A stretch of DNA of 54,179 nucleotides, counting the filler, from Hydrolagus affinis (taxonomy: Eukaryota): NCBI GenBank assembly GCA_012026655.1. It is 3 parts of 3 records of this genome, joined end to end, with 100 filler letters (N's around TTAATTAATTAA, not from the genome) between each part and the next. Parts side by side here need not be neighbours in the genome. Positions count along the whole stretch, not along the records: positions 42,256 to 54,179 come from JAAILG010022731.1; 2 more parts are not named here. One strand, written 5' to 3'. Below, in pieces: positions 42,256 through 54,179 of this stretch (positions within the stretch are counted from its first letter, which is position 1; each line of letters begins with the position of its first letter). The position numbers and the translations under genes are program-made. A model generated the notes under the pieces. The model saw only the letters and a program-made list of their open reading frames with translations. It made no database searches and had not been told where the DNA came from.

Positions 42256-42634
42256 TGATACAGAGTCGTGAATTAGAATTTCAGTCCAGACTATCATCTC
42301 AATGTAACGTCTTGAGCCTTGAACAAAAATCGTTCTGACTCATTAAATATAGTACCAACAACAGAGGTAGGTTGTCATCTCAGCCTTGAATTTAGACAGT
42401 TAACCTTTGTTCGTGGGTGAAACATGTATCTATTCCCTCCGTTCTAGCCCGGATCCACCTGTAGCCAATCAGCTGCTGATTAAGGCCAATATACTCTGGT
42501 TAGTGTGACACACCTACAATTTTATTGAATAACCCACTGCCTGCACACAGCAGATCAGCCGCTGCCTCGCTACTTGTAACTGAAGCAGTCGAACAGACAT
42601 ATACAAATAAATAGATACCACCTCAGCAGCCAGC

Positions 42635-42680
42635 ATGACAGTTCACTGTCAGTTAATGTTAGCAATCCTCGCCATAGCCA
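42635..42680 (+). CDS. V segment 1 leader exon (MTVHCQLMLAILAIA)
   Basis: 46 nt, phase-1 donor CCA/GTAAGT; paralogous to the leader at 53302. Confidence 0.75.
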
Positions 42681-42757
42681 GTAAGTATGTGTAGACATGC
42701 CCAGTGCATGTGATTTTTTATTACAAGATGTGGAAAGCACTATATCAAATGCCAGTA

Positions 42758-42758
<1 letters not shown>

Positions 42759-42789
<31 letters not shown>
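42759..42789. repeat. (ATT)n microsatellite
   Basis: Direct reading. Confidence 0.9.
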
Positions 42790-42792
<3 letters not shown>

Positions 42793-43239
42793 ATTATATA
42801 ATATTCAGTAGAGTAGCAATTAGAGCTCTCCAATTGAAAAAGAAAGCACCTAAGCGTAACTCACGGCAGGGCTAATTGTTGGACAATTTGCTTTACACCA
42901 ACACACGACTTTGTGAGTCTACCACTAATAAGGAACTGTATTCAAATTCCACCTAGAATCTTCTCTCCGACAATTATTGATAATATCAATACTTTGAGAG
43001 CTCACTCTCAAACTCTTTATGGGACACTGTTGTGCACAATTAGCTGTGAGGTTCGCCTGAAAAGGCGATTGGAGTCAATTCATTTGAGTTTATATTCATG
43101 GGTTGTTTTGTGTATAGTTTTTGTAACGTCTCATTGTTGTTAAAATTCCAGCAAAAAAACTCAATAATAGTTGGTATTATTCGAATTGCACATTAATCTT
43201 TGCCTTGCCTTGTGAAAAACATGTTTTTTTTTATTGCAG

Positions 43240-43537
43240 AAGTTACCGGGAAAGATGTAATATACCAATATCCTCCTGTGATAAGGAAGGTTGAAGAACA
43301 AGACGCGAGATTAAACTGCAATTATTCCATAATGGACGCTGCCTTCTGGTACAGGCAATATCCAGACGGAGAGCTTCAGTACTTCTTCAGGATATACGCC
43401 TCGGGAAAGGTAGACAAAGCTCCTGATATTCCTGACCGCTTCACTGCCAAGCTGGACAAGGAGAATAAAGCATTTAGCTTGCAAATACTCAGGGCTGTTG
43501 TGGGTGACGGCGCCGTGTATTACTGTGCCCTGCAGCC
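43240..43537 (+). CDS. TRAV: TCR alpha/delta-type V segment 1, apparently functional
   Basis: Acceptor TTGCAG; open frame with Cys, FWYRQ and AVYYCALQP, followed by an RSS. Confidence 0.85.
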
Positions 43538-43576
43538 CACACTGTGACAGGATGCCACATACACTGTACAAAAACT
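43538..43576 (+). promoter_or_regulatory. 23-RSS of V1
   Basis: CACACTG + 23 nt + ACAAAAACT. Confidence 0.85.
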
Positions 43577-43669
43577 CAGCAGACAATCGTGACTTCCTCT
43601 CACACTTTCAACTTCTTGCTGCCAACACAGGTGGCTACACTATTATAACAGGGAGGGCGGTGGACAGAG

Positions 43670-44045
43670 GCTGTGGAATGTAGTGCAGCGTTTAGAGTAC
43701 TCGCCTTGCTCTCGAGTGGACCTCGGATTCATTCCCAAGCAACGGGAATCCTTACGTAGTTCTCCACACACTGGAAGAACATACATCTTTACTTAACAGT
43801 TGCTTAGAACCTTCCTATTAGTCGTTGGGTGGATCCCTTTCCCTGCGTTTATAATCCGTTAAATAAACATAATAATATAAATGTAATTACTCTATCCACG
43901 TAAGTTTGTAGGACACTGCTTTGCTCATTGGCCTGCCAGTGTTTCTTCCACCAAGACACACATTGTCAAGGCACATTACGGTATATTCTGTGAAGCCCTA
44001 CGAGACATGCGAAAAATAACGCTATATCAAATCCAAAGATATTTT
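43670..44045 (+). mobile_element. tRNA-headed SINE about 100 nt downstream of the V1 RSS
   Basis: Degenerate head at 43679, core at 43905, tail at 44020. Confidence 0.65.
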
Positions 44046-44898
44046 TAAAATTATTGTTGCAGTACTATATAGTAATAATCAAACATCTAACTTCCAAGTA
44101 ATACACCTAACAGTGACTTACATACTGTGGATGATATATTAGATTCCTGACGGACGTACTGGGCTGACACACTAGTGCAGGGCTTGGGGGGTGTCTAGAA
44201 ATGCCAGAGAAGCTGCTCTTCAGTTGGACCATCAAACAGTTGTCCAGTCGGTTTGTAGCAAGTGTCGTTAATGATCCCATGTGAGAGCAATAACAGGTTT
44301 TCTCCTGGTGATTGGGCTGACACTCCATCAGCACAATTATTTGTTCACTTCACAGATGACTGAGGGAACATTGTTTTAAATACATTAGCCGATGACGTTG
44401 CCAAACACTCAATCTCTGCCCTCGAGAGAAAAGCCTGTGTCGACCTATAGGAATCTTCCATTAACTGATTTGTTTAGGATATCTGCAAAAGAATGTTAAA
44501 CCTAAATAACTCCTTGAAGGCATATTTCTTCCGATATTGCATTCCCTTAGAAAATTACAATAATAATATTAATAATACTAACAGCTATATTTGATGAATT
44601 CGATGTAGTCCAGATTATTTCATTCACGTGATTCAAAGTGATTAAAAGAATATACTGAAAAGTGCAGTAACTTCCTATCTTGTGTGCTGAATGAACTCTG
44701 TTGGAAGCAGACAGGGGAATGAATGTCACACCAGCAAACATACAGGAAATGAGACGTCAGTGGAGGCATCACCGAGAGCAGTTATAACCTACACAGTTAG
44801 CGGCACTCGACAAACATTTATGATCGTTTCTCAGCAGTTAGCTGGTGTCTACTTGCATTTCATTTGGAGATCCTGACATGAATCGACAAGGCTTGAGA

Positions 44899-44956
44899 AT
44901 GAAACCAAGTTGCCAAGCAACGTGTAGTATTTTTAATTTCATGCTGTCGCTCTTCT
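44899..44956 (+). CDS. Candidate leader exon of V segment 2
   Basis: MKPSCQATCSIFNFMLSLF + T/GTAAGT (phase 1); no good in-phase acceptor found downstream. Confidence 0.45.
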
Positions 44957-45049
44957 GTAAGTAGAGTGTGATTTTGAACAAAGACATGCTTGTTTGCTGT
45001 TAAATAATTATAAGTTTTGTTGGAGATATTTTCCGAATTTCCTTCAAAG

Positions 45050-45339
45050 AATGTTCATGTCTTGGCTGAAAGCGAAGTGTCACAGAGACCTCAGGCACTG
45101 ACAGAGAATGAAATTGGAAATGTATATATAGAGTGCAACACCACTGTGTACAACCCAACTTTTTATTGGTATAAACAGTATGGAAACGGCTCCATAGGGT
45201 TATTGGTGTTGGGAAAAAGGGAGGTAAAGGCGGAGGAGAGGATAAGTTCTTTGGCTGATTCAAAAGAGAAGAACAGCAAACTGACAATTAGAGACGTGCG
45301 AGTGACAGACACCGCCACTTACTTCTGTGCAGCAGAGAG
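45050..45339 (+). CDS. TRAV: TCR alpha-type V segment 2 (5' boundary uncertain)
   Basis: Open frame EVSQ..YIEC..YWYKQ..DTATYFCAAE, followed by a consensus RSS. Confidence 0.82.
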
Positions 45340-45378
45340 CACAGTGCTGCGTGTCTAAGAGGAGCCTGTACAAAAACA
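45340..45378 (+). promoter_or_regulatory. 23-RSS of V2
   Basis: CACAGTG + 23 nt + ACAAAAACA. Confidence 0.92.
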
Positions 45379-45384
45379 TGCTGA

Positions 45385-45742
45385 GGTTGCTGTAGCTCAA
45401 TGATTAAAGTACTCGTTTCACAAACGATAAGATTGTTGGTTCGTATCCCAGCAGGCCAAAAACTCGGCCATTGTTTTCTAACACCACACGCTTCTGAGTA
45501 CATACGAGTAAATAGGAATCCGGTTATTAATCTAATAGTGGATGGCTTTTTCTCGATTCATAATTTCTAATTAAAATGATCACTTAAATCCACGAATTAT
45601 TGTGTGACACTGCTGTGCGCAGTTATGTGCCGCATTTATCCCATAACATAGACAGTAAACTCAAAGCACAGTACAACAAGGGAAGCGCTACTCGACGTCT
45701 CAAGGACGTGGTAAAGCACTATATCAAATGCATAGATTATTA
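45385..45742 (+). mobile_element. tRNA-headed SINE directly after the V2 nonamer
   Basis: TGTAGCTCAA at 45391, GGTTCGTATCC at 45438, core and tail present. Confidence 0.75.
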
Positions 45743-45959
45743 GCATTATTGTCTGTTTGCCGACGTGTAAGTAGGGCCCCATTTAATTGTCAATTACTAT
45801 GTCGCCATTTTCCAGGATGGTAATCCATTCAACAAACATTATTGTCACTCGATTGTCTACCAATCGTACAAAGCAGCATTGTCCCACAGACAGTCGTGTT
45901 TTGAGTTACTTATTTAACAAGAGAATGATGCCCCTGTGAAGGAAACATAAATTAATAAT

Positions 45960-46262
45960 AATAATAAATATTGCAATTGATACAGCGCTTTTCACATCTT
46001 ATCGAGGACTTAAAGCGTTTCACAGAGTACACTGTAAAGTGAACTGACTGTATATTTGTGGGCGAAACGCGGCTGCCAGAACCACGAACAATCGTTGATT
46101 GAAACCACCAATATTATTATTGTGGTGTTTTTATTTGCACGGATTTTCGTTAGGCGTGTGTGGGGTTTAAGGAAGCTTGTCCAGGCTTTCGCCCTGATCT
46201 GCTTGGATTCGAACACACACTTGAATGCCGAGTGCTCTGAACACCGAGTTAAAGCACGGAGA
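45960..46262 (-). mobile_element. tRNA-headed SINE
   Basis: Tail, core and head recognisable. Confidence 0.75.
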
Positions 46263-46541
46263 TAAAGCCTCTCGTACTCACTGGTCGACTAATAACCATA
46301 TTCCTGCGTGTCAGACACCCGGTGGATCAAAGACATGTCAGTGATGGCAGAGAACCAATGGTGCAGCGAGATGGGTGAGCAGAGAAGATGACGCAAATTG
46401 ACAGAGAAACAAGGATTGTACCTAAACCTCAGACCTGCTGACTCTATGCCATTCAGTGTTCAGCTCTCCTCACGCTATCTTACCGCTTCCTCGCCTAAAT
46501 TCTCCAAATAAAACATCAGCGCCCTTTACATATACACGGCA

Positions 46542-46581
46542 ATGTATATATATGTGGCAGCAGCCATCATTGCCTTGTCAG
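46542..46581 (+). CDS. V segment 3 leader exon (MYIYVAAAIIALS)
   Basis: 40 nt, phase-1 donor CAG/GTAAGC. Confidence 0.75.
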
Positions 46582-47074
46582 GTAAGCCATAAACTCATTC
46601 TATAGTCAGCCAACTGCACTGATTATCCAGCCAGGTGTTTATTGCTTAACATATTGAATACACAACAAGCCTTATAGAGTTGTCACAATCGAGAGTATCT
46701 GGGTTCTTCACAGCCGGCATAGGGCGAAACATTAGGCAAGTTTGTCACTCATCACTCATTGCTGTGAATACCGAGAAGTAATTTTGAACATGGTCCATCG
46801 GCCGATTGCTTTATTGGGGGTTAATTATCTCCAAGTATGTGATACTGCTAATCATAATATAGTTGCTCAATCCATGACTGTTTGTGGAACACTCTTGTGT
46901 AAAATTGGCTAATAAGTTTAAACCGCAAAGTAAACAGACACCACACTTTACCCTATATTCTGTTTAGTTGACGTTTAGTGATCGCGAAGACGCAAATTAT
47001 ATCTTTGTCATATGCCTGCATTAGTATCTTATTGTTGTTATTCTACTGAACGCTGACATGTGACTGTTTTCCAG

Positions 47075-47381
47075 GACACTGTGGAGGAGACTATGTGACA
47101 CAGCTACAATCTACTGTGACAGTAAATGAAGGGGAGGATGTGTATCTGAGGTGTAATTATACAACCACAAGTAATTCTCCCTATCTGTTCTGGTACCGCC
47201 ATTATCCGAACACAGCTCCACAATATATCGTTTGGACGTCCACTAGCAACAGACCACAATATGCCGACTTTACCAACAAACGATTCTCAACGATGGTGGA
47301 TAAAGTGGGAAAAACTGTCCCGTTAAATATAACCCAAGTGAAAGTTACAGATTCGGCGATGTACTACTGTGCACTGAGTCC
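47075..47381 (+). CDS. TRAV: TCR alpha/delta-type V segment 3, apparently functional
   Basis: Acceptor TTCCAG; GDYVTQ..YLRC..YLFWYRH..DSAMYYCALSP. Confidence 0.9.
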
Positions 47382-47420
47382 CACAGAGACTCAGATCAGC
47401 GCTTCCGCCCTACAAAAACT
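47382..47420 (+). promoter_or_regulatory. 23-RSS of V3
   Basis: CACAGAG + 23 nt + ACAAAAACT. Confidence 0.9.
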
Positions 47421-47429
47421 GACAATTGT

Positions 47430-47560
47430 AGTCCTGTAGCTCAGTGTTTAGAGCACTCATATCGCTAGCGACGAACCTGGGTTGAATTCCATGGAGAACG
47501 AAACTTCGGTGAAATTTTCTTAAACTACACACTGTCAACTCAGCAGTAAGTTCGAACCCG
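47430..47560 (+). mobile_element. SINE head directly after the V3 nonamer
   Basis: AGTCCTGTAGCTCAGTGTTTAGAGCACTC, B-box-like GGTTGAATTCC at 47480. Confidence 0.8.
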
Positions 47561-48600
47561 TTTATTATTTGATTACTGCATTGCTTTTCCATTGGTATTA
47601 ATTACTTCAAAATATATGATATGGCGCTGAATCGAATGCGAGGATTATATGAGTATAAAACATAATCAAGTTACTATCACTGACATAACTTCAAAGCTCC
47701 TGCTTTCTTCGGCTGTTCGATGGACACGTCATTTAATACACAGCATTCACAACGCTTTGCTTGACATCTATGGATTAGAGGATACAACAGATCTGGTCGT
47801 GCAGTTACAACAGGTTCATTCAATGGTTCGCAAAAGAGCACACACTGAAGACATGATTGTGTTCTTCCTTGCGGCAATAAGAATTGAGGACAAAGTTGAT
47901 TATTGATGCAACAAAAATAAAAACGCTGATCATTTGTCACTTCTCATCCAGTTTTCGTATTCAAAGTCCTCGTCCACAACTTCAAGGCCATTCACGGCGT
48001 TGCCACGCACGCGACCCACCCCCTCGCCAGCGCTACCGCCCCAATCTCCGACCTGCTGTCCTCCTATGAACCTCCACGCCCCCTCCGTTCAGCGGGCTCC
48101 GATCCGCCCCATGTCCCCCGCCTGACCCGCCCTATCATCGGTGGACGGGCTTTCTTCCACTAAACTCTGGAACTCCATCCCACAGTCCCTAGGCCTGGCA
48201 ACCTCCCTCGCCTCCTTGAAGGCCTGTCTCAAGTCCCTCCTCTTCGACCATGCCTTCTGTCCCCCCGACTCTTCGTCGTCGTTCCTATCACCCGCCCTCC
48301 AGTCTTACCTGTCTCACGCCCCTCCACACTACCCTGCCCTCTCCATTGCTCAGTTCCAGAGCTGACAGGTCAGCGGCTTCGGACGTCCATCCGACGTGAA
48401 CAACAGCAACAAAATTGTACTTACATAGCGCCTGTCACGTCGGGAGGACGTCCCAAATGTGATTCTTTTGTTGATGTAGTGGTAAATACATTGCATTGTG
48501 ACATCATCCCAAAATGAATGGTGCCACACACATGTAACTATTGTGCGGCTGTCATGTAAACGGTGAATGGCAGATCAAGGTCAAGTAAAATATAATCAAC

Positions 48601-48907
48601 GTTTCCAGGATCAGAGCAAGGAATAGCATCAAAGTGGAGAAACAATGATCAGGGATATATCACTGTAAGAGACTGTGAATGAGAATGAATTCGTGTGTCC
48701 CATTAAAGCACAGACAATACGAGGAAAAAACAAGTGAATGGGACTGAGGTATCAATTTCCATTGGAGGCAATGGGACCAGGAACGTTAAGAAGGCCCCCA
48801 AAAAAACACTTGCTTACAACAGTGGATAAATCGGCGAGAACCGTCCCATTATATATATCCCAAGTGAGATTCACAGACTCGGCGGTGTATTACTGTGCAC
48901 TGAGCCC
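48601..48907 (+). pseudogene. V segment 4 relic, V3 family
   Basis: Only FR3 (VDK..VPL.I.QV..TDSAVYYCALSP, from about 48810) aligns well to V3; 5' half degenerate, no intact first Cys or Trp. Confidence 0.8.
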
Positions 48908-48946
48908 CACAGAGGCACAGATCAGCGTTTCCGCCCTACAAAAACT
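48908..48946 (+). promoter_or_regulatory. 23-RSS of V4 relic
   Basis: CACAGAG + 23 nt (20/23 identical to the V3 spacer) + ACAAAAACT. Confidence 0.88.
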
Positions 48947-48954
48947 ATCATGCA

Positions 48955-49120
48955 GTGTCCTCTATCTCAGAAGTTAGAGCAGTCGATTCGGAAGCGAGAG
49001 TACCTGGGTTCGACTACGTGCTGCGCGAAAATTTGGACAAGTTTTCTTAATATGTGTATACCTCTATTTAGACAGGAGTCAGTAGCAACCCGCTTTTTAG
49101 TAACTGGTAAATGAATTAAT
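48955..49120 (+). mobile_element. SINE head directly after the V4 nonamer
   Basis: GTCCTCTATCTCAGAAGTTAGAGC, B-box-like GGTTCGACTAC at 49007. Confidence 0.7.
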
Positions 49121-49659
49121 CTACAGTAGATATAATTCCTTCAAAATATGTTTATTATTATTCGTGAATTACTAACTGAATTCAAAGAAACACTGACGTT
49201 TGTAGTCAATGTTGCGTGTATTTATGCAACTTTTACATATATTGTTGAGATATAAAGGTGGGTCGGATATATTGGTATTACAATAAATATAAGATAATAT
49301 CAAGTTTCAATTTTGTATTGAAGACTGAAGATGAGCGCGTTTGATGAAGAAATAAGTCGTTATTATATTGATATTTCCATCTGATCAATTGCCTTACATT
49401 AATATGTCTCAAAGACTATACTATAAAGTGAATTGACTGTGTATTTTGTGGGAGTGATTACTCAGATTCAAATGTACACGTTTAAGCCGTGAATCTGATA
49501 GGAGCAGTCCCACACGCCCACAGCAGCTGGAGGGCCGAGATAGTGACGCACATATAAGAGACAACATCACAAAGGATTCTCAGCTACATCTATGGCCTCA
49601 GTATCAGACGGTGTCAAGAGCAGCAGAGACATAAACGCTGTTTGTGGTGTCTGAATGTA

Positions 49660-50797
49660 ATGCAGTTGGGATATTAGCTCTACGCATCCATCGCATTCTC
49701 TCTATATGGTTAGTTAATCTAGATATCATTACCGACAGCCAATCCAGTCAATGCTAGTACCACGGGTCACCTCTAAACAGAGTCTCCTTTAACACCGTTT
49801 ACTGTAACTTTGCTGTGCACAATTGGCTGTCAAGCTTCACGCACAAATATGCAGTCAACTCACTTTACAGTATATTCTGTGAAGCGCTTAGTGACGTCTA
49901 GAAGTCATGGAATGCGCTATACCAAAATCAATAATGATTATTATGATTTCTCCATTTGTAGGACGATGCAATTTAATTTTCCAATGACGGACAAATTCTT
50001 ACAGACTTGTGGCCTCTTGTGTTATCTCGCGGCACAAAACATTCCCGTGGGTGGAGATATTCTCAAAGCGTCTCAAAGTGTTACATTGAAAATAGTAATA
50101 ATCCTTTCATTTGATAGTGAGGTTTTCACAAATTATCGACGTCTCAAGGAGCTTCACAGAATGCACTGTACAGTAAATTCACTTAAGATTGTGGGCGAAA
50201 CGCGGCAGCCGTTTGCGCACAGCAGCGTCCCCACAAACAGTCGTTTATTGAAAATGACCAATTTATATTTGTGTCTAATTTTAAAGGAATTTTTATTAGG
50301 CGCGTGTGTGCAGTAAGGAAACTTGCCAAGATTTCGCCCTGAGCTGCCTGTACTTGAACACAGGTCTCCCGCTTGTAAGGCTTGTGCTCTAACCACTGTG
50401 CCACGGGAGCTCCATATCCTCTAAATCGCATGAACGCCGCATACAATAGCGTTGTTTGTTTTTACTTAGTATTAATCGGTTCAACGCTGAATAATACAAT
50501 TGTTTCCTGTAGGAATCCGTGATGGAGATTCGGTGAGGCAGAGCCCGAAAGCGGCCTGGCGTTTGGAAGTCGCCTCACTGACTATCATCTGTAATGTCTC
50601 CACGACTACTCAGTGCTGCTGTACCGCCAGCGCCGCAGTGAAGGGCCCGCTTTCATCATCCTAAGGCATTCCTACGGGAAGTATATCAGTCAGGAACGCT
50701 TCTCTGCCCTGATGGATTCCTCTAAGAAACATTTCCAGTTCAAGATCGACAACCTGCAGCTCAGCGACAGTGCTGCCTATGTTTGTGCACTGAGGCC
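49660..50797 (+). pseudogene. V segment 5 pseudogene (leader 49660-49708, V exon 50513-50797)
   Basis: In-frame TAG in the leader at 49675; frameshift near 50602 after the first Cys; conserved Trp reads Leu; YVC instead of YYC. Confidence 0.8.
50125..50412 (-). mobile_element. tRNA-headed SINE in the V5 leader intron
   Basis: Tail, core and head recognisable. Confidence 0.75.
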
Positions 50798-50835
50798 CAC
50801 AGCGAAGCCATCCTCGCGAAACCCGTACAAAAACC
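50798..50835 (+). promoter_or_regulatory. RSS of V5 (22-nt spacer)
   Basis: CACAGCG + 22 nt + ACAAAAACC. Confidence 0.85.
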
Positions 50836-50840
50836 CTTGT

Positions 50841-51030
50841 GGCGTTATGTGCCATATTGGTTGGAGCACTCAACTGGAAAGCGGCAGGAGCTGGGTTCAA
50901 TTCCTATTGAGGGAGAAACTCTCTAAGATGCATAGAAGGCGCAATGTAATAACAAGTGTTTATAGTTAGGCAAGTTTCCTTACTCCATACATCTCTGATT
51001 AACTTGCTGTAAGTGTGAACCCGCTTTACA
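50841..51030 (+). mobile_element. SINE head directly after the V5 nonamer
   Basis: GGCGTTATGTGCCATATTGGTTGGAGCACTC, B-box GGTTCAATTCC at 50894, CAAGTTTCCTTACTCC body at 50970. Confidence 0.7.
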
Positions 51031-52794
51031 TGCGATTATAATTAGCTCCTGTAGCTCAGTAGTTAGAGCACTCGACTTATTCGACCGAAACTACAGCTGA
51101 ACCCATTTCTGGGTGTGCAGGTAGAGCAAACTAAATCAACGCTTTGAAGCAAACCACACTATGAACCACCGTAAATGTTGGTGCATGGAGTGAGAAGAGA
51201 GGTAACATTGATCCAGATTATTTCTCACTTCTCTTCAAGGCAAAACAGCACCTAGAGACATCACTGTGATTAGCGCTGTATCAATGTAATACAATTGTAT
51301 ACCCATGTAAATCTTATGGTTCTGTAATGTAAATTCTTAATGTCAACATTACTTAATGTAACATTACCAATTACAAGATAAGTAACAGGAATCAAATTAA
51401 ATTGGTGGTGTCAAGTATAATGAGAGACACGTCGCAATGAGGTTGGAGTCGAATTTCCCATTGAACCATAGGCAATATGAGAAACGAGCAGCGAGATAAG
51501 AATAAGGTATCAATATCCAAAGGAAGGGATAGGAACAGGAAAGATAGGGTGGGACGAAATCAACTTGCAAGCGTTTGTCTCTGCAGTACACGTGTTATAG
51601 CTATAATCAACCAATAGATGGCGAAGCAAACACACCTATAACACCAGCAGCAACTGACATAACTTCCCACGTTGCTTTCTGTAACAACTAATTTGGCAGC
51701 CACAGCAGGTGCTTCCTGTAACAGTTGACACTGTTTCCCTGCTATACACTATCGCTGGCTCAGCTGAAAAATGCAAAGGTTTGTCTAAAGCCTGATTAAC
51801 GCAAGGCTGCGGTTGACTAATGAACAATGTATCCATATTTATTCTATAATGTTGTACTTCTCACAAAAAAAACGACCTTTCGTGGATCTTATTAGTTTTA
51901 TCAAGGTGTTAGTATTCGATATAAGCAATCAGTTTTTTTTATTGGTTTAATTCGGGAAAACTTTTAATACTGGCCTACGTTAATTCATTTTAGAACACAT
52001 AGTTAAAAGCATATTTCCTGTGATACATTGCCAACAAAAGAACGAATGAGATTGATAATAAAAATAGTAATAATAATAATAATACCAGTAACATTAACTG
52101 CCTTTGCGGTAGCATCTTTCTCTTTGAGAAAGATAGTAAAGCCTTGAAGTTACATAGTAAATGTTTACTGTTTTCGGCTGGGCTGCACAGTTCAAGCATT
52201 CATCACTAACACAATTGAATGCGTTCACAACGATAATAATAATCCACCTATATGATCTAGTCCATTTTGAAACCCTCTAGTCGTCTCAAAATACTTCAAG
52301 GAATATATTGTTGTGCGAGTTATAAAAATTGTTGTGTTTAATGTTGATATTGTGATTTATCACGTTTCCCATAAAAGTACCACAGACGATCTACTGTATA
52401 AACTAATGACTGTATATTTCGCTTGTGAAACGCGGCAATGAATTGCCCAGAACATTTCCTCCAAAGCAGCCGGGGAAGGAAGGAACAAATCATTATTATT
52501 ATTATTTATATTTGAAGAGTTGATTACAGCAGCAACGTGATCCACCAACGGACTAAGCTACACGATGCGACTCATTTTCAGCGATACGTAGTTGCGTGTG
52601 TAGATTAAGAACATTTGCTCAAATTATCGCCCTGTCTGGTAATCAAACCCAAGTCGGCTCACTTGTGAGTTGAGTTCAGTGACGTATATCACTTTGTTTG
52701 TGGGCTAAATCTACATTTCATTCCTTTCCCAGATTCACTAGCTGTCAATCAGCGGTACAATAACTACAAAAATTTTACATATATAAAACTAATA

Positions 52795-53095
52795 ACATAT
52801 GCAATTGCTATAGCGTTTTTCACAATTTCACGACGTCTCAAAGCGTTACACAGTATATACTGCGAAGCGAATTGACTGTGTATTTGTGGGCAAAACGCGG
52901 CAGCCAATTGCACACGGTAGCTTCCCCACAAACAGTCGTGGTTTGAAATGACTAATTTTTATTATTGTGTATTTTTGAACGGAATATTATTAGGCGTGTG
53001 TGTGGAGTAAGGAAACTTGCGCAAGGTTTCGCCCTGATGTGCATGGATTCAGACACAAGTCTGAAGCTTGTAAGCAGAGAACTCTAACCACTGTA
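52795..53095 (-). mobile_element. tRNA-headed SINE upstream of the V6 leader
   Basis: Tail, core and head recognisable. Confidence 0.75.
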
Positions 53096-53301
53096 CAGCA
53101 AAGGTTGCACGTCGGGAAGACGTCTCAAGTTGCGGTGGATCACGTTCAAGATCCACTGGTTAGTGAGCAACGCCTACACATGTAGACGATAATCCACTGC
53201 ACACGTCAGACCCGCCGCTGCTTCACAACATTCAACTGAAGCAGCAAAGCAGCCTTTTATACAGGAAGAGACTATTATCTGTCCACACCTCAGCAGACAG
53301 C

Positions 53302-53347
53302 ATGGCAGCTCACTGCCAGTTATTGATATTAATTCTCACTCTATCCA
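53302..53347 (+). CDS. V segment 6 leader exon (MAAHCQLLILILTLS)
   Basis: 46 nt, phase-1 donor CCA/GTAAGT; paralogous to V1 leader. Confidence 0.75.
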
Positions 53348-53917
53348 GTAAGTATGTTTGGACATGACCAATGCATGATGCGCACATGGGTTTAATGTTG
53401 TCGTTGTTGTTATGTAATTAACGAATCGCTTCCTAATAATAATGTTTAAAAATACTAATTTGATCGATAAATCTACAACAGATTGTGGGACACGGCTACC
53501 CACAATTGAATGCCAAGTTTCCACCAACAGAACATACATTAAATACGCTTCACATCACTGAAGCGATTGGAGACGGCGACAAGACGAGATAATGCAAACA
53601 AACAAACCCAAGAGATGTGTACTTTTAATTTGGAAGCAGCTTTTAATGAATTATTTCACGAGCTGCAGAAAATCAAAGTTAAAAGTTGAATGGAACAACT
53701 TCGCAAGTATAAGCACTTCTAACATTTAGAAACTCAGACAGAAAATCTATCAGCACCAAAACACTATTGATCGTTTAGCGTTCACCAGCAAAGTTACAGT
53801 AATAAAAGCAACACTTGTGTTTCATATTGACATTTTAGACGTGTAAAAGTTCTCCATAATATACATAGTAAAGTGAGTTGACTCATACTTTTAATTAGAA
53901 ATGTATTGCTTTTCCAG

Positions 53918-54179
53918 TGGCCAGTGGGATATACCAAAACCCTCCTGAGATAACAGAACATGAAGGACAAAACGTGACAATAAGAATGAACGTTTCAAGA
54001 ATAGACACTATCTTCTGCTACAGGAAATATCCCGCTGGAGATCTTGAGTATATCCTCAGGATATATGCCTCGGGAAAGGTAGATAAAGCAATTGGAATTG
54101 CTGACCGTTTCACTGCCGAGGTGAACAAGAGGAAGAAACTAATTAACTTGCAGATTCTCAGGGTTGTTGTGAGTGACAG
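53918..54179 (+). CDS. TRAV: V segment 6, V1 family, truncated by window end; first Cys and Trp altered
   Basis: Acceptor TTCCAG; open frame sharing RIYASGKVDKA and DRFTA with V1; absent from the ORF track because no stop lies in the window. Confidence 0.75.

What the first reader, a model, noticed from the sequence alone, without database searches (positions are those of the whole stretch)
45340..50904. tRNA-SINE Pol III promoter at a fixed 13-15 bp offset behind four RSS nonamers
Seen: the SINE A-box-like TGTAGCTCAG (or its degenerate match) starts 13 nt (V2, 45391), 15 nt (V3, 47435), 15 nt (V4, 48961) and 13 nt (V5, 50848) after the last nonamer base, always on the same strand. Each has a B-box-like GGTTC/GRANNC about 45 nt further on. 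V1 has the same head at +103 nt. V2, V3/V4 and V5 are divergent families, so one recent duplication does not explain all four. Established: TFIIIC-bound SINE B-boxes can act as insulators or loop anchors, and mouse proximal VH segments have CTCF sites just 3' of the RSS that promote their use. Inference: either an old insertion was kept with each V-RSS cassette (possibly as an accessibility element), or it spread by gene conversion, or the A-rich nonamer is a retrotransposon endonuclease target. I found no target-site duplications.
Basis: partly seen in the sequence, partly recalled or inferred. Interest (0 to 1): 0.75.

Follow-up and report, generated by a model that had tools for sequence, protein, structure and literature searches.

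The report
Old SINE copies abutting TCR V-gene RSS nonamers
In a chimaera-like T-cell-receptor V-gene array, decayed copies of one old tRNA-derived SINE start right after the recombination-signal nonamer of four V segments; they look like repeated insertions at one kind of site, not like working Pol III promoters kept for a function.

Summary
Tails of 23-RSSs end at 45378, 47420, 48946 and 50835. A tRNA-like SINE head starts 13, 15, 15 and 13 nt later on the same strand, and V1 has one at +103. Random placement gives three of four independent RSSs about 5 times in 10 million.

The heads are the 5' ends of roughly 200-390 nt SINE copies with an L2-type 3' region and (ATT)n tail. They belong to the older of two subtypes that fill at least 29% of the piece. 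They are decayed: no tRNA by ARAGORN, one sub-threshold Rfam hit, and A/B boxes no better kept than the rest.

V3 and V4 share one copy by duplication. Between V families, homology begins at the SINE. RSS spacers are random to each other, synonymous sites are largely saturated, yet the SINE copies are only as diverged as the V3/V4 pair. This argues against one ancient inherited insertion and favours at least two, probably three, independent insertions next to the A5 nonamer. No target-site duplications could be recovered and no preference could be tested genome-wide, so the mechanism is inferred. A selected Pol III or insulator role is not supported. Interest is moderate.

The parts
45340..45378 (+). 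V2 23-RSS (CACAGTG, 23-nt spacer, ACAAAAACA) behind V2 exon 45050-45339
   Evidence: V-set domain by Pfam
45379..45751 (+). SINE copy V2p (older subtype B), full length: tRNA-like head, body, L2-type 3' region, (ATT)n-like tail. Its 5' leader starts 0-5 nt after the nonamer.
   Evidence: nhmmer 45386-45750, E 6e-24; Rfam tRNA 23.8 bits, below the 29-bit cut-off, at 45390-45454; alignments
47382..47420 (+). V3 23-RSS behind V3 exon 47075-47381
47421..47655 (+). SINE copy V3p (subtype B) with an internal deletion of the 3' domain; tail-like end at 47623-47650
   Evidence: nhmmer 47432-47532, E 8e-11; alignment; very high depth of other genomic copies on bin 47401-47600
48815..48946 (+). V4: only the FR3 end of a V3-like gene (48815-48907) plus its 23-RSS (48908-48946)
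   Evidence: FR3 78% identical to V3, heptamer and nonamer identical, spacer 20/23
48947..49290 (+). SINE copy V4p (subtype B), duplicate of V3p; the 3' limit is approximate
   Evidence: nhmmer 48956-49051, E 5e-9
50798..50835 (+). V5 RSS (22-nt spacer) behind V5 exon 50513-50797. The exon is frameshifted and lacks 10 nt at 50608 compared with related genomes.
50836..51039 (+). SINE copy V5p (subtype B), head and body. It carries a ~40-nt insert and stops at the A/T-rich body motif where the next SINE begins.
   Evidence: nhmmer 50848-50991, E 2e-5
51040..51300 (+). Second, divergent SINE copy (f51), head-to-tail behind V5p and in the same orientation
   Evidence: (51044-51079 and 51247-51286)
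43538..43576 (+). V1 23-RSS behind V1 exon 43240-43537. The next 92 nt (43577-43668) are not recognisable SINE.
43669..44055 (+). SINE copy V1b (subtype B), full length; its head motif lies at +103 from the V1 nonamer
   Evidence: nhmmer 43669-43771 and 43851-44048
45943..46289 (-). SINE copy m46 (younger subtype A), upstream of V3; used as a comparator that is not next to an RSS
50076..50454 (-). SINE copy m50 (subtype A), inserted into an older minus-strand subtype-B copy in the V5 intron, at the same A/T-rich body motif as f51
52770..53137 (-). SINE copy m53 (subtype A), upstream of V6
52344..52677 (-). SINE copy m52 (subtype B), not next to an RSS; used as a comparator

Best explanation
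The four 'promoters' are the decayed tRNA-like 5' heads of copies of one old, L2-mobilised, tRNA-derived SINE. This is the older of two subtypes in the piece, probably the SacSINE1-CM kind described in Callorhinchus milii. The younger subtype resembles CmiSINE.

Each copy lies in the V-gene orientation. The 12-14 nt 'offset' resembles the SINE's own 5' leader (the similarity is partial, roughly 4-9 matches per copy, and untested against chance; it cannot be confirmed without a family consensus), so the element would start 0-5 nt after the nonamer.

Shown: V3 and V4 carry one insertion that was duplicated with them. Inferred: the V2 copy, and probably the V5 copy, are separate insertions made long after the V families split.

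Inferred mechanism: target-primed reverse transcription starts from a nick in the T5 run opposite the nonamer's A5. That puts the SINE on the A-rich strand, a short and LINE-specific distance downstream. This is the first place where an insertion leaves both the V exon and the RSS intact. After insertion the copies decayed neutrally, and nothing suggests they act as Pol III promoters or insulators now.
For: 1. SINE identity and abundance. A profile made from three other copies finds 22 pieces covering at least 29% of the piece, including all five post-RSS regions. Related genomes pile huge depth on these segments. Two subtypes share the 3' half. The younger subtype is found inserted in the older one. 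This matches the published pair CmiSINE and SacSINE1-CM, which share an L2-2_CM tail and have the same age order (PMC5499810).

2. The homology boundary. RSS spacers of different families are no more alike than shuffles: 6-9.5 of 23, with a null of about 6.5 (V2/V5 reaches 9.5 against a null mean of 5.8, nominal p 0.036, not corrected for ten pairs). V3/V4 share 20 of 23. The SINE that follows is alignable in all copies.

3. Relative dating. The V3p/V4p pair has no more shared derived changes than unrelated copy pairs have (7, against a background of 1-10). Its path length of 0.59 equals the FR3 dS of 0.57, so the insertion is about as old as the V3/V4 duplication. V3p-V5p and V3p-V2p paths are also 0.59 and 0.67. 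Between families, however, pS is 0.62-0.95, dN is 0.57-1.0, and codons at identical residues match in only 33-56% of cases, against 71-79% within families.

4. Old V families. V3 is 61-73% identical to C. milii V proteins and about 50% to cyprinid TRAV, but only 33-34% to V1 and V2. V1, V2 and V5 sit on very long branches.

5. Geometry elsewhere in the piece. Two other SINE heads (f51, m50) sit directly behind an A/T-rich motif of an older SINE, in the same orientation. In cell assays the second-strand cut lies at a LINE-specific distance from the first nick, about 5 bp for an L2-clade element (PMC4245944). That would keep offsets tight.

6. No constraint. Identity to consensus is 0.81 in the boxes and 0.74 elsewhere for post-RSS copies, against 0.73 and 0.79 for other copies. 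ARAGORN finds nothing.
Against: No target-site duplication could be recovered for any copy, so no insertion is proven to be separate. Three hits within 2 nt of each other need a strong site preference. A mere liking for A5 runs (38 in the piece) gives my rough estimate of only about 0.004-0.02 (a hand calculation, not a tool result). Other old copies (V1b, m46, m53) show no clear A-run in front of them. The preference of the partner LINE is unknown.

The clock argument rests on about 110-200 SINE sites and 21-65 synonymous sites. For V5 against V3/V4 it is marginal: 15 of 27 same codons against 15 of 21. The SINE tree has no resolution and cannot reject one clade of post-RSS copies (p-AU 0.26). 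It does not even recover V3p+V4p. Only one 12-kb piece could be examined.
Confidence: 0.5

Rival explanations
1. One ancient insertion behind an ancestral V-RSS was inherited by all cassettes through tandem duplication. The 2-nt differences in offset are later indels, and V1 gained about 90 nt between the nonamer and the SINE.
For: Same strand and almost the same offset in all four. This is the simplest reading of the position, and it is certainly true for V3/V4. The SINE tree cannot reject a single clade (p-AU 0.26). Holocephalan DNA evolves slowly and published rate calibrations differ several-fold, so very old copies may stay recognisable. V3/V5 synonymous divergence is not clearly saturated.
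Against: RSS spacers of different families are random to each other right beside SINE copies that are still alignable. The V3p/V4p pair is as diverged as any inter-family pair and shows no excess of shared derived sites, although the V3/V4 exons and RSS are far closer than those of V3/V5 or V3/V2. The V families look older than the split from bony fishes. V1's 92-nt spacer shows no SINE remnant.
Confidence: 0.17
2. The SINE heads are kept behind the RSS because TFIIIC or Pol III binding to the A and B boxes makes an accessibility, insulator or loop-anchor element that promotes use of the V segment. This would be analogous to the CTCF sites behind mouse proximal VH RSSs.
For: The positional enrichment is far beyond chance. 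B boxes of the four copies have only 1-2 mismatches. Box identity to consensus (0.81) is slightly above the rest (0.74).
Against: The box excess is small and I ran no significance test on it; non-RSS copies show similar values. A boxes carry 1-3 mismatches, there is no tRNA by ARAGORN, and only one sub-threshold Rfam hit. V3p and V4p diverged at the synonymous rate, with the linker 43% and the head 61% identical. V4 is a gene fragment and V5 a frameshifted pseudogene, yet both keep the copy. There is no CTCF-like motif. The one RNA run laid showed no reads on the V exons and only multi-copy SINE signal.
Confidence: 0.08
3. The SINE spread from one V flank to others by gene conversion or unequal crossing-over, using the conserved FR3 end and RSS as homology.
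For: The last ~25 nt of V3, V4 and V5 plus the heptamer are very similar (family D6). V arrays are known to undergo conversion (general knowledge).
Against: Spacers between heptamer and nonamer are unrelated across families, so a tract would have to begin exactly at the nonamer's end. There is no homology on the far side. The copies show long private branches and no sign of homogenisation.
Confidence: 0.05

Closest known systems
SacSINE1-CM and CmiSINE (SINE2-1_CM / SINE2B-1_CM) of Callorhinchus milii, mobilised by LINE L2-2_CM (Luchetti et al. 2017, PMC5499810)
   Same: tRNA-like head with A and B boxes. Two families share the ~160-nt 3' region and an L2-type tail. The older family is about 22% diverged and the younger 13-17%, and the younger inserts into the older. 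Density is very high, about half a million copies in a ~1 Gb genome. The V proteins of this piece are closest to C. milii.
   Different: The paper reports nothing on target sites or on RSSs.
A-rich target sites of LINE endonucleases, and SINE insertions into A-rich tails of older SINEs (L1/Alu type TT|AAAA; established knowledge)
   Same: The new element lies on the A-rich strand, a short distance downstream of the A run. Head-to-tail nesting in the same orientation is seen here for f51 and m50.
   Different: The partner here is an L2-clade LINE with an (ATT)n-type tail, whose site preference is not known. No target-site duplications are visible.
CTCF-binding elements just 3' of mouse proximal VH RSSs
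   Same: A sequence element at a short fixed distance behind V-segment RSSs.
   Different: No CTCF-like motif here. The element is a decaying repeat with no sign of constraint.

Membership tests
tRNA-derived SINE | tRNA-related 5' head with Pol III A and B boxes | tested here: met
   Rfam tRNA alignment of 45390-45454, 23.8 bits. Box matches have 1-3 mismatches and 43-45 nt spacing.
tRNA-derived SINE | Many dispersed copies on both strands, unrelated to the flanks | tested here: met
   22 profile hits in 11.9 kb on both strands. Depth in related genomes is about 5 to several thousand times the neighbouring bins on the repeat-bearing bins.
tRNA-derived SINE | LINE-related 3' region and simple-repeat tail | tested here: inconclusive
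   A shared 3' domain ending in (ATT)n is seen in all full-length copies. It resembles the L2/MIR 3' end from memory and fits PMC5499810, but no LINE sequence was available to compare.
tRNA-derived SINE | Target-site duplications | tested here: not met
   None recognisable by eye or alignment for V1b, V2p, V3p/V4p, m46, m50 or m53. Copies are 17-37% diverged and an L2-type duplication may be only ~5 bp, so this failure is expected and not informative.
SacSINE1-CM / CmiSINE families | Deu or CORE central domain and sequence identity to the published consensus | not testable with these tools
   No consensus is held: no supplements for PMC5499810, and these families are not in Rfam.
Functional tRNA gene or intact Pol III type-2 promoter | Cloverleaf that passes tRNA detectors, and consensus A and B boxes | tested here: not met
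   ARAGORN finds 0 genes. Rfam gives one hit below the gathering score. Every post-RSS copy has mismatches in both boxes.
23-RSS of a V segment | CAC-heptamer, 23+/-1 spacer, A-rich nonamer directly behind a V-set exon ending in Y-x-C-A | tested here: met
   Five RSSs, one with a 22-nt spacer.
RSS-proximal CTCF-type accessibility element | CTCF core motif within about 100 nt behind the RSS | tested here: not met
   Only 2 weak matches in the window, at the chance level, and neither lies behind a nonamer.

The most novel reading that the evidence does not exclude
The L2-type retrotransposition machinery that moved this SINE had a real preference for the 3' edge of RSS nonamers. It may have recognised the same A-tract or bent DNA that RAG reads, or used RSSs engaged in germ cells of cartilaginous fishes. 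If so, antigen-receptor V arrays were hot spots, and many independent V families across holocephalan TCR and Ig loci would carry a SINE at this exact spot.
Probability: 0.25. Interest if true: 0.65.

Novelty: new member of a known kind. Interest (0 to 1): 0.4.

Why it matters
If the separate insertions are confirmed locus-wide, RSS nonamers would be a recurrent landing site for a vertebrate SINE. That would be a new kind of interplay between retrotransposons and the V(D)J system. It would also give a simple way to date V-segment duplications from the SINE copies attached to them. It also matters as a caution: a striking fixed offset between a 'promoter' and an RSS can arise without any regulatory function.

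Tried and rejected
- tRNA detection: ARAGORN found nothing, and an Rfam E-value scan gave one sub-threshold tRNA hit.
- Target-site duplications: searched by eye and by alignment around all head-bearing copies, none convincing. Candidate short matches (V2 TGCTG/TGTCTG; V3 A-run/TAAAAC) are not above chance.
- V1's 92 nt between nonamer and SINE were tested as a possible older SINE remnant. They are not significantly similar (p >= 0.05).
- An ML tree of the SINE copies is a star. It has no power to group or separate the post-RSS copies.
- A CTCF motif scan gave chance-level matches only.
- A pattern scan of metagenome contigs for RSS plus tRNA-like head returned 32 loci, none a chondrichthyan V gene. 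Most belong to an unrelated invertebrate-like repeat. One contig (L012) looks like a mammalian, possibly human, TRBV segment. It was seen only in that batch print and was not saved, compared or searched further.
- A word search with the V2 protein found no relatives.
- Sequencing runs hold only related genomes, with small word shares and 86-90% identical contigs. They bridge the V2, V4 and V5 RSS-SINE junctions, which shows only that the insertions predate those splits.
- The RNA run showed no reads on V exons, so it says nothing about Pol III activity.
- My first label, 'V-SINE', came from memory and was dropped after reading PMC5499810.
Full report
**What the piece is**

Places 42256-54179 hold a plus-strand array of V segments. 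V1 has its exon at 43240-43537, V2 at 45050-45339 and V3 at 47075-47381. V4 is only an FR3 end, at 48815-48907. V5 lies at 50513-50797 and is frameshifted. V6 starts at 53918 and is cut by the edge of the piece.

The exons encode V-set domains ending in Y-x-C-A. V3 is 61-73% identical to Callorhinchus milii V proteins and about 50% to cyprinid TRAV. The source is therefore a holocephalan-like TCR alpha/delta locus. Each complete V is followed by a 23-RSS (22 nt in V5) with an ACAAAAAC nonamer.

**Checking the observation**

The TGTAGCTCAG-type motif begins 13, 15, 15 and 13 nt after the nonamers of V2, V3, V4 and V5. It begins 103 nt after that of V1. B-box-like motifs lie 43-45 nt further on.

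V3 and V4 are old duplicates, so they count as one event. Random placement of the nine independent head-bearing copies puts a same-strand head 10-20 nt behind three of four independent RSSs in about 5e-7 of trials. The association is real.

**What the element is**

A profile built from three minus-strand copies (m46, m50, m53) finds 22 pieces on both strands, covering at least 29% of the piece. All five post-RSS regions are among them.

Full-length copies are about 350-390 nt. They have a tRNA-like head, a body, a shared 3' domain and an (ATT)n-like tail. There are two subtypes.

- Subtype A (m46, m50, m53) is 17-20% diverged from consensus and has a 5-nt insert after the B box.
- Subtype B (V1b, V2p, V3p, V4p, V5p, m52) is 25-37% diverged and has a longer body.
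- Copy m50 of subtype A sits inside an older minus-strand subtype-B copy.

This picture matches the two SINE families described in C. milii: the younger CmiSINEs and the older SacSINE1-CM. Those families share about 160 nt at the 3' end, use the L2-2_CM tail, and together number about half a million copies (PMC5499810). I could not compare with their consensus sequences, so the assignment is probable rather than tested.

Contigs of related genomes pile up from about 5 to several thousand times more deeply on the repeat-bearing bins than on the V exons.

**Where the SINE really starts**

Copies that are not next to an RSS (V1b, m46, m50) share an AGAGGCT-type leader of 13-17 nt before the TGTAGCTC motif. 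The 12-14 nt 'linkers' of V2, V3, V4 and V5 align partly to that leader; the match is weak (roughly 4-9 positions per copy) and I did not test it against chance. On this reading the SINE would begin 0-5 nt after the nonamer, and the 'fixed offset' would be mostly the SINE's own 5' end. A family consensus is needed to settle this.

**Are these working Pol III promoters, or conserved?**

- ARAGORN calls no tRNA. Rfam gives one hit below threshold, on V2p.
- Every copy has 1-3 mismatches in each box.
- Identity to consensus in the boxes is 0.81, against 0.74 elsewhere in the post-RSS copies. The other copies show 0.73 and 0.79. The difference is small; I ran no significance test on it.
- In the V3/V4 duplicates the FR3 has pS 0.40 and pN 0.15. 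The heptamer and nonamer are identical and the spacer matches at 20 of 23. The linker is only 43% identical and the head 61%, which equals the synonymous level. The SINE has therefore drifted neutrally since that duplication.
- V4 is a fragment and V5 a pseudogene, yet both keep their copy.
- No CTCF-like motif lies behind any RSS.

**One inherited insertion, or several?**

Three lines of evidence point the same way.

1. Homology boundary. Spacers of different V families are as unlike as shuffled sequence: 6-9.5 matches of 23, with a null of about 6.5 (V2/V5 has a nominal p of 0.036, uncorrected for ten pairs). V3/V4 match at 20 of 23. Directly behind the nonamer, all copies align to the SINE. 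If the SINE had been inherited with the cassette, the spacer beside it should be at least as similar as the SINE is.

2. Calibration with V3/V4. Relative to a consensus of the other copies, V3p and V4p share 7 derived sites. That is within the background of 1-10 seen between unrelated copies. Each also has 16-19 private changes. In the ML tree their path is 0.59, equal to the FR3 dS of 0.57. The paths from V3p to V5p and to V2p are 0.59 and 0.67. The insertion behind the V3/V4 ancestor is thus about as old as that duplication, and the other copies are of similar age.

3. The V families are much older.
   - Between families pS is 0.62-0.95 and dN is 0.57-1.0, against 0.40 and 0.17 for V3/V4.
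   - At identical residues the same codon is used in 33-56% of cases between families, against 71-79% within families.
   - V3 is closer to teleost TRAV (about 50%) than to V1 or V2 (33-34%), and V1, V2 and V5 sit on very long branches.

Together these argue against a single pre-family insertion. They support at least two separate acquisitions (V2 against V3/4), and probably three, since the evidence for V5 is weaker.

V1 has an empty site at +13 and a separate subtype-B copy at +103.

**How it most likely happened (inferred)**

In target-primed reverse transcription, the first nick lies on the strand opposite the A-rich target. The element ends up on the A-rich strand, and its 5' end lies one target-site duplication downstream of the nick. 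For the nonamer, the A5 run is on the V coding strand. This predicts what is seen: same orientation as V, and a 5' end a few nt behind the nonamer.

The distance between the two nicks is LINE-specific, about 5 bp for an L2-clade element in cell assays (PMC4245944). That would keep offsets tight. An insertion there leaves both V and RSS intact, so it is neutral.

In the same piece, two other heads (f51 and m50) sit directly behind an A/T-rich motif of an older SINE, in the same orientation.

Some things remain unexplained. A simple liking for A5 runs (38 in the piece) would give three nonamer hits with a probability of only about 0.004-0.02 by my rough hand estimate. A stronger preference is therefore needed, and I could not test one. 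CAAAAAC occurs seven times in the piece, and five of those are nonamers. No target-site duplications are recognisable, and older non-RSS copies show no clear A-run upstream.

**Limits**

- Only this 12-kb piece could be studied.
- The metagenome pattern scan gave nothing useful. One possibly human-like TRBV contig (L012) was left aside.
- The sequencing runs are from related genomes and show only that the junctions predate those splits.
- The SINE tree has no resolution.
- The dating rests on about 110-200 SINE sites and a few dozen synonymous sites.

**Verdict**

The elements are ordinary, neutrally decaying SINE copies, not maintained Pol III promoters. The interesting residue is that their position next to RSS nonamers seems to have arisen more than once. 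That points to the nonamer's A-tract as a preferred retrotransposition target, and it needs a locus-wide and genome-wide test.

Noticed in passing
window 50600-50612 (V5 exon): V5 changes reading frame near 50601-50604. Contigs of two related genomes carry 10 extra nt behind 50608, which would keep the frame. V5 is therefore a recent pseudogene, or an assembly error, in this genome.
   Followed up: partly
window 47950-48440: A GC-rich (about 53%) repeat, read on the minus strand, lies between the V3 SINE and the V4 fragment. Depth is high in all related genomes and in the RNA run. It probably truncated V4. Its family was not identified.
   Followed up: no
window 48678-48783 and 51436-51541: A 106-nt direct repeat, 71% identical, lies a few hundred nt downstream of two V cassettes. 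It is not part of the SINE profile and its nature is unknown.
   Followed up: no
window 50455-50512 and 50076-50454 versus 50836-51300: The V5 exon is flanked by inverted composite repeats. Each consists of an older subtype-B SINE body followed, at the same body motif, by a second SINE head. The splice acceptor of V5 lies at the edge of the minus-strand copy.
   Followed up: partly
window 42862-43085, 46866-47026, 53432-53591: The leader introns of V1, V3 and V6 each hold a plus-strand 5'-truncated SINE piece, at different distances from the exon. The V1 intron also has an (ATT)13 tail at about 42757-42797.
   Followed up: no
window 45464-45472, 47510-47517, 49039-49046: V2p, V3p and V4p have a TTTT run just after the tRNA-like part, where the family consensus reads TTTCC. 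Any Pol III transcript would stop after about 90 nt. This may be a shared subtype feature or parallel C-to-T decay.
   Followed up: no
L012 (metagenome contig Ga0126362_10015646): A chance pattern match in what looks like a mammalian, possibly human, TRBV segment with its RSS. It is not a SINE head.
   Followed up: no
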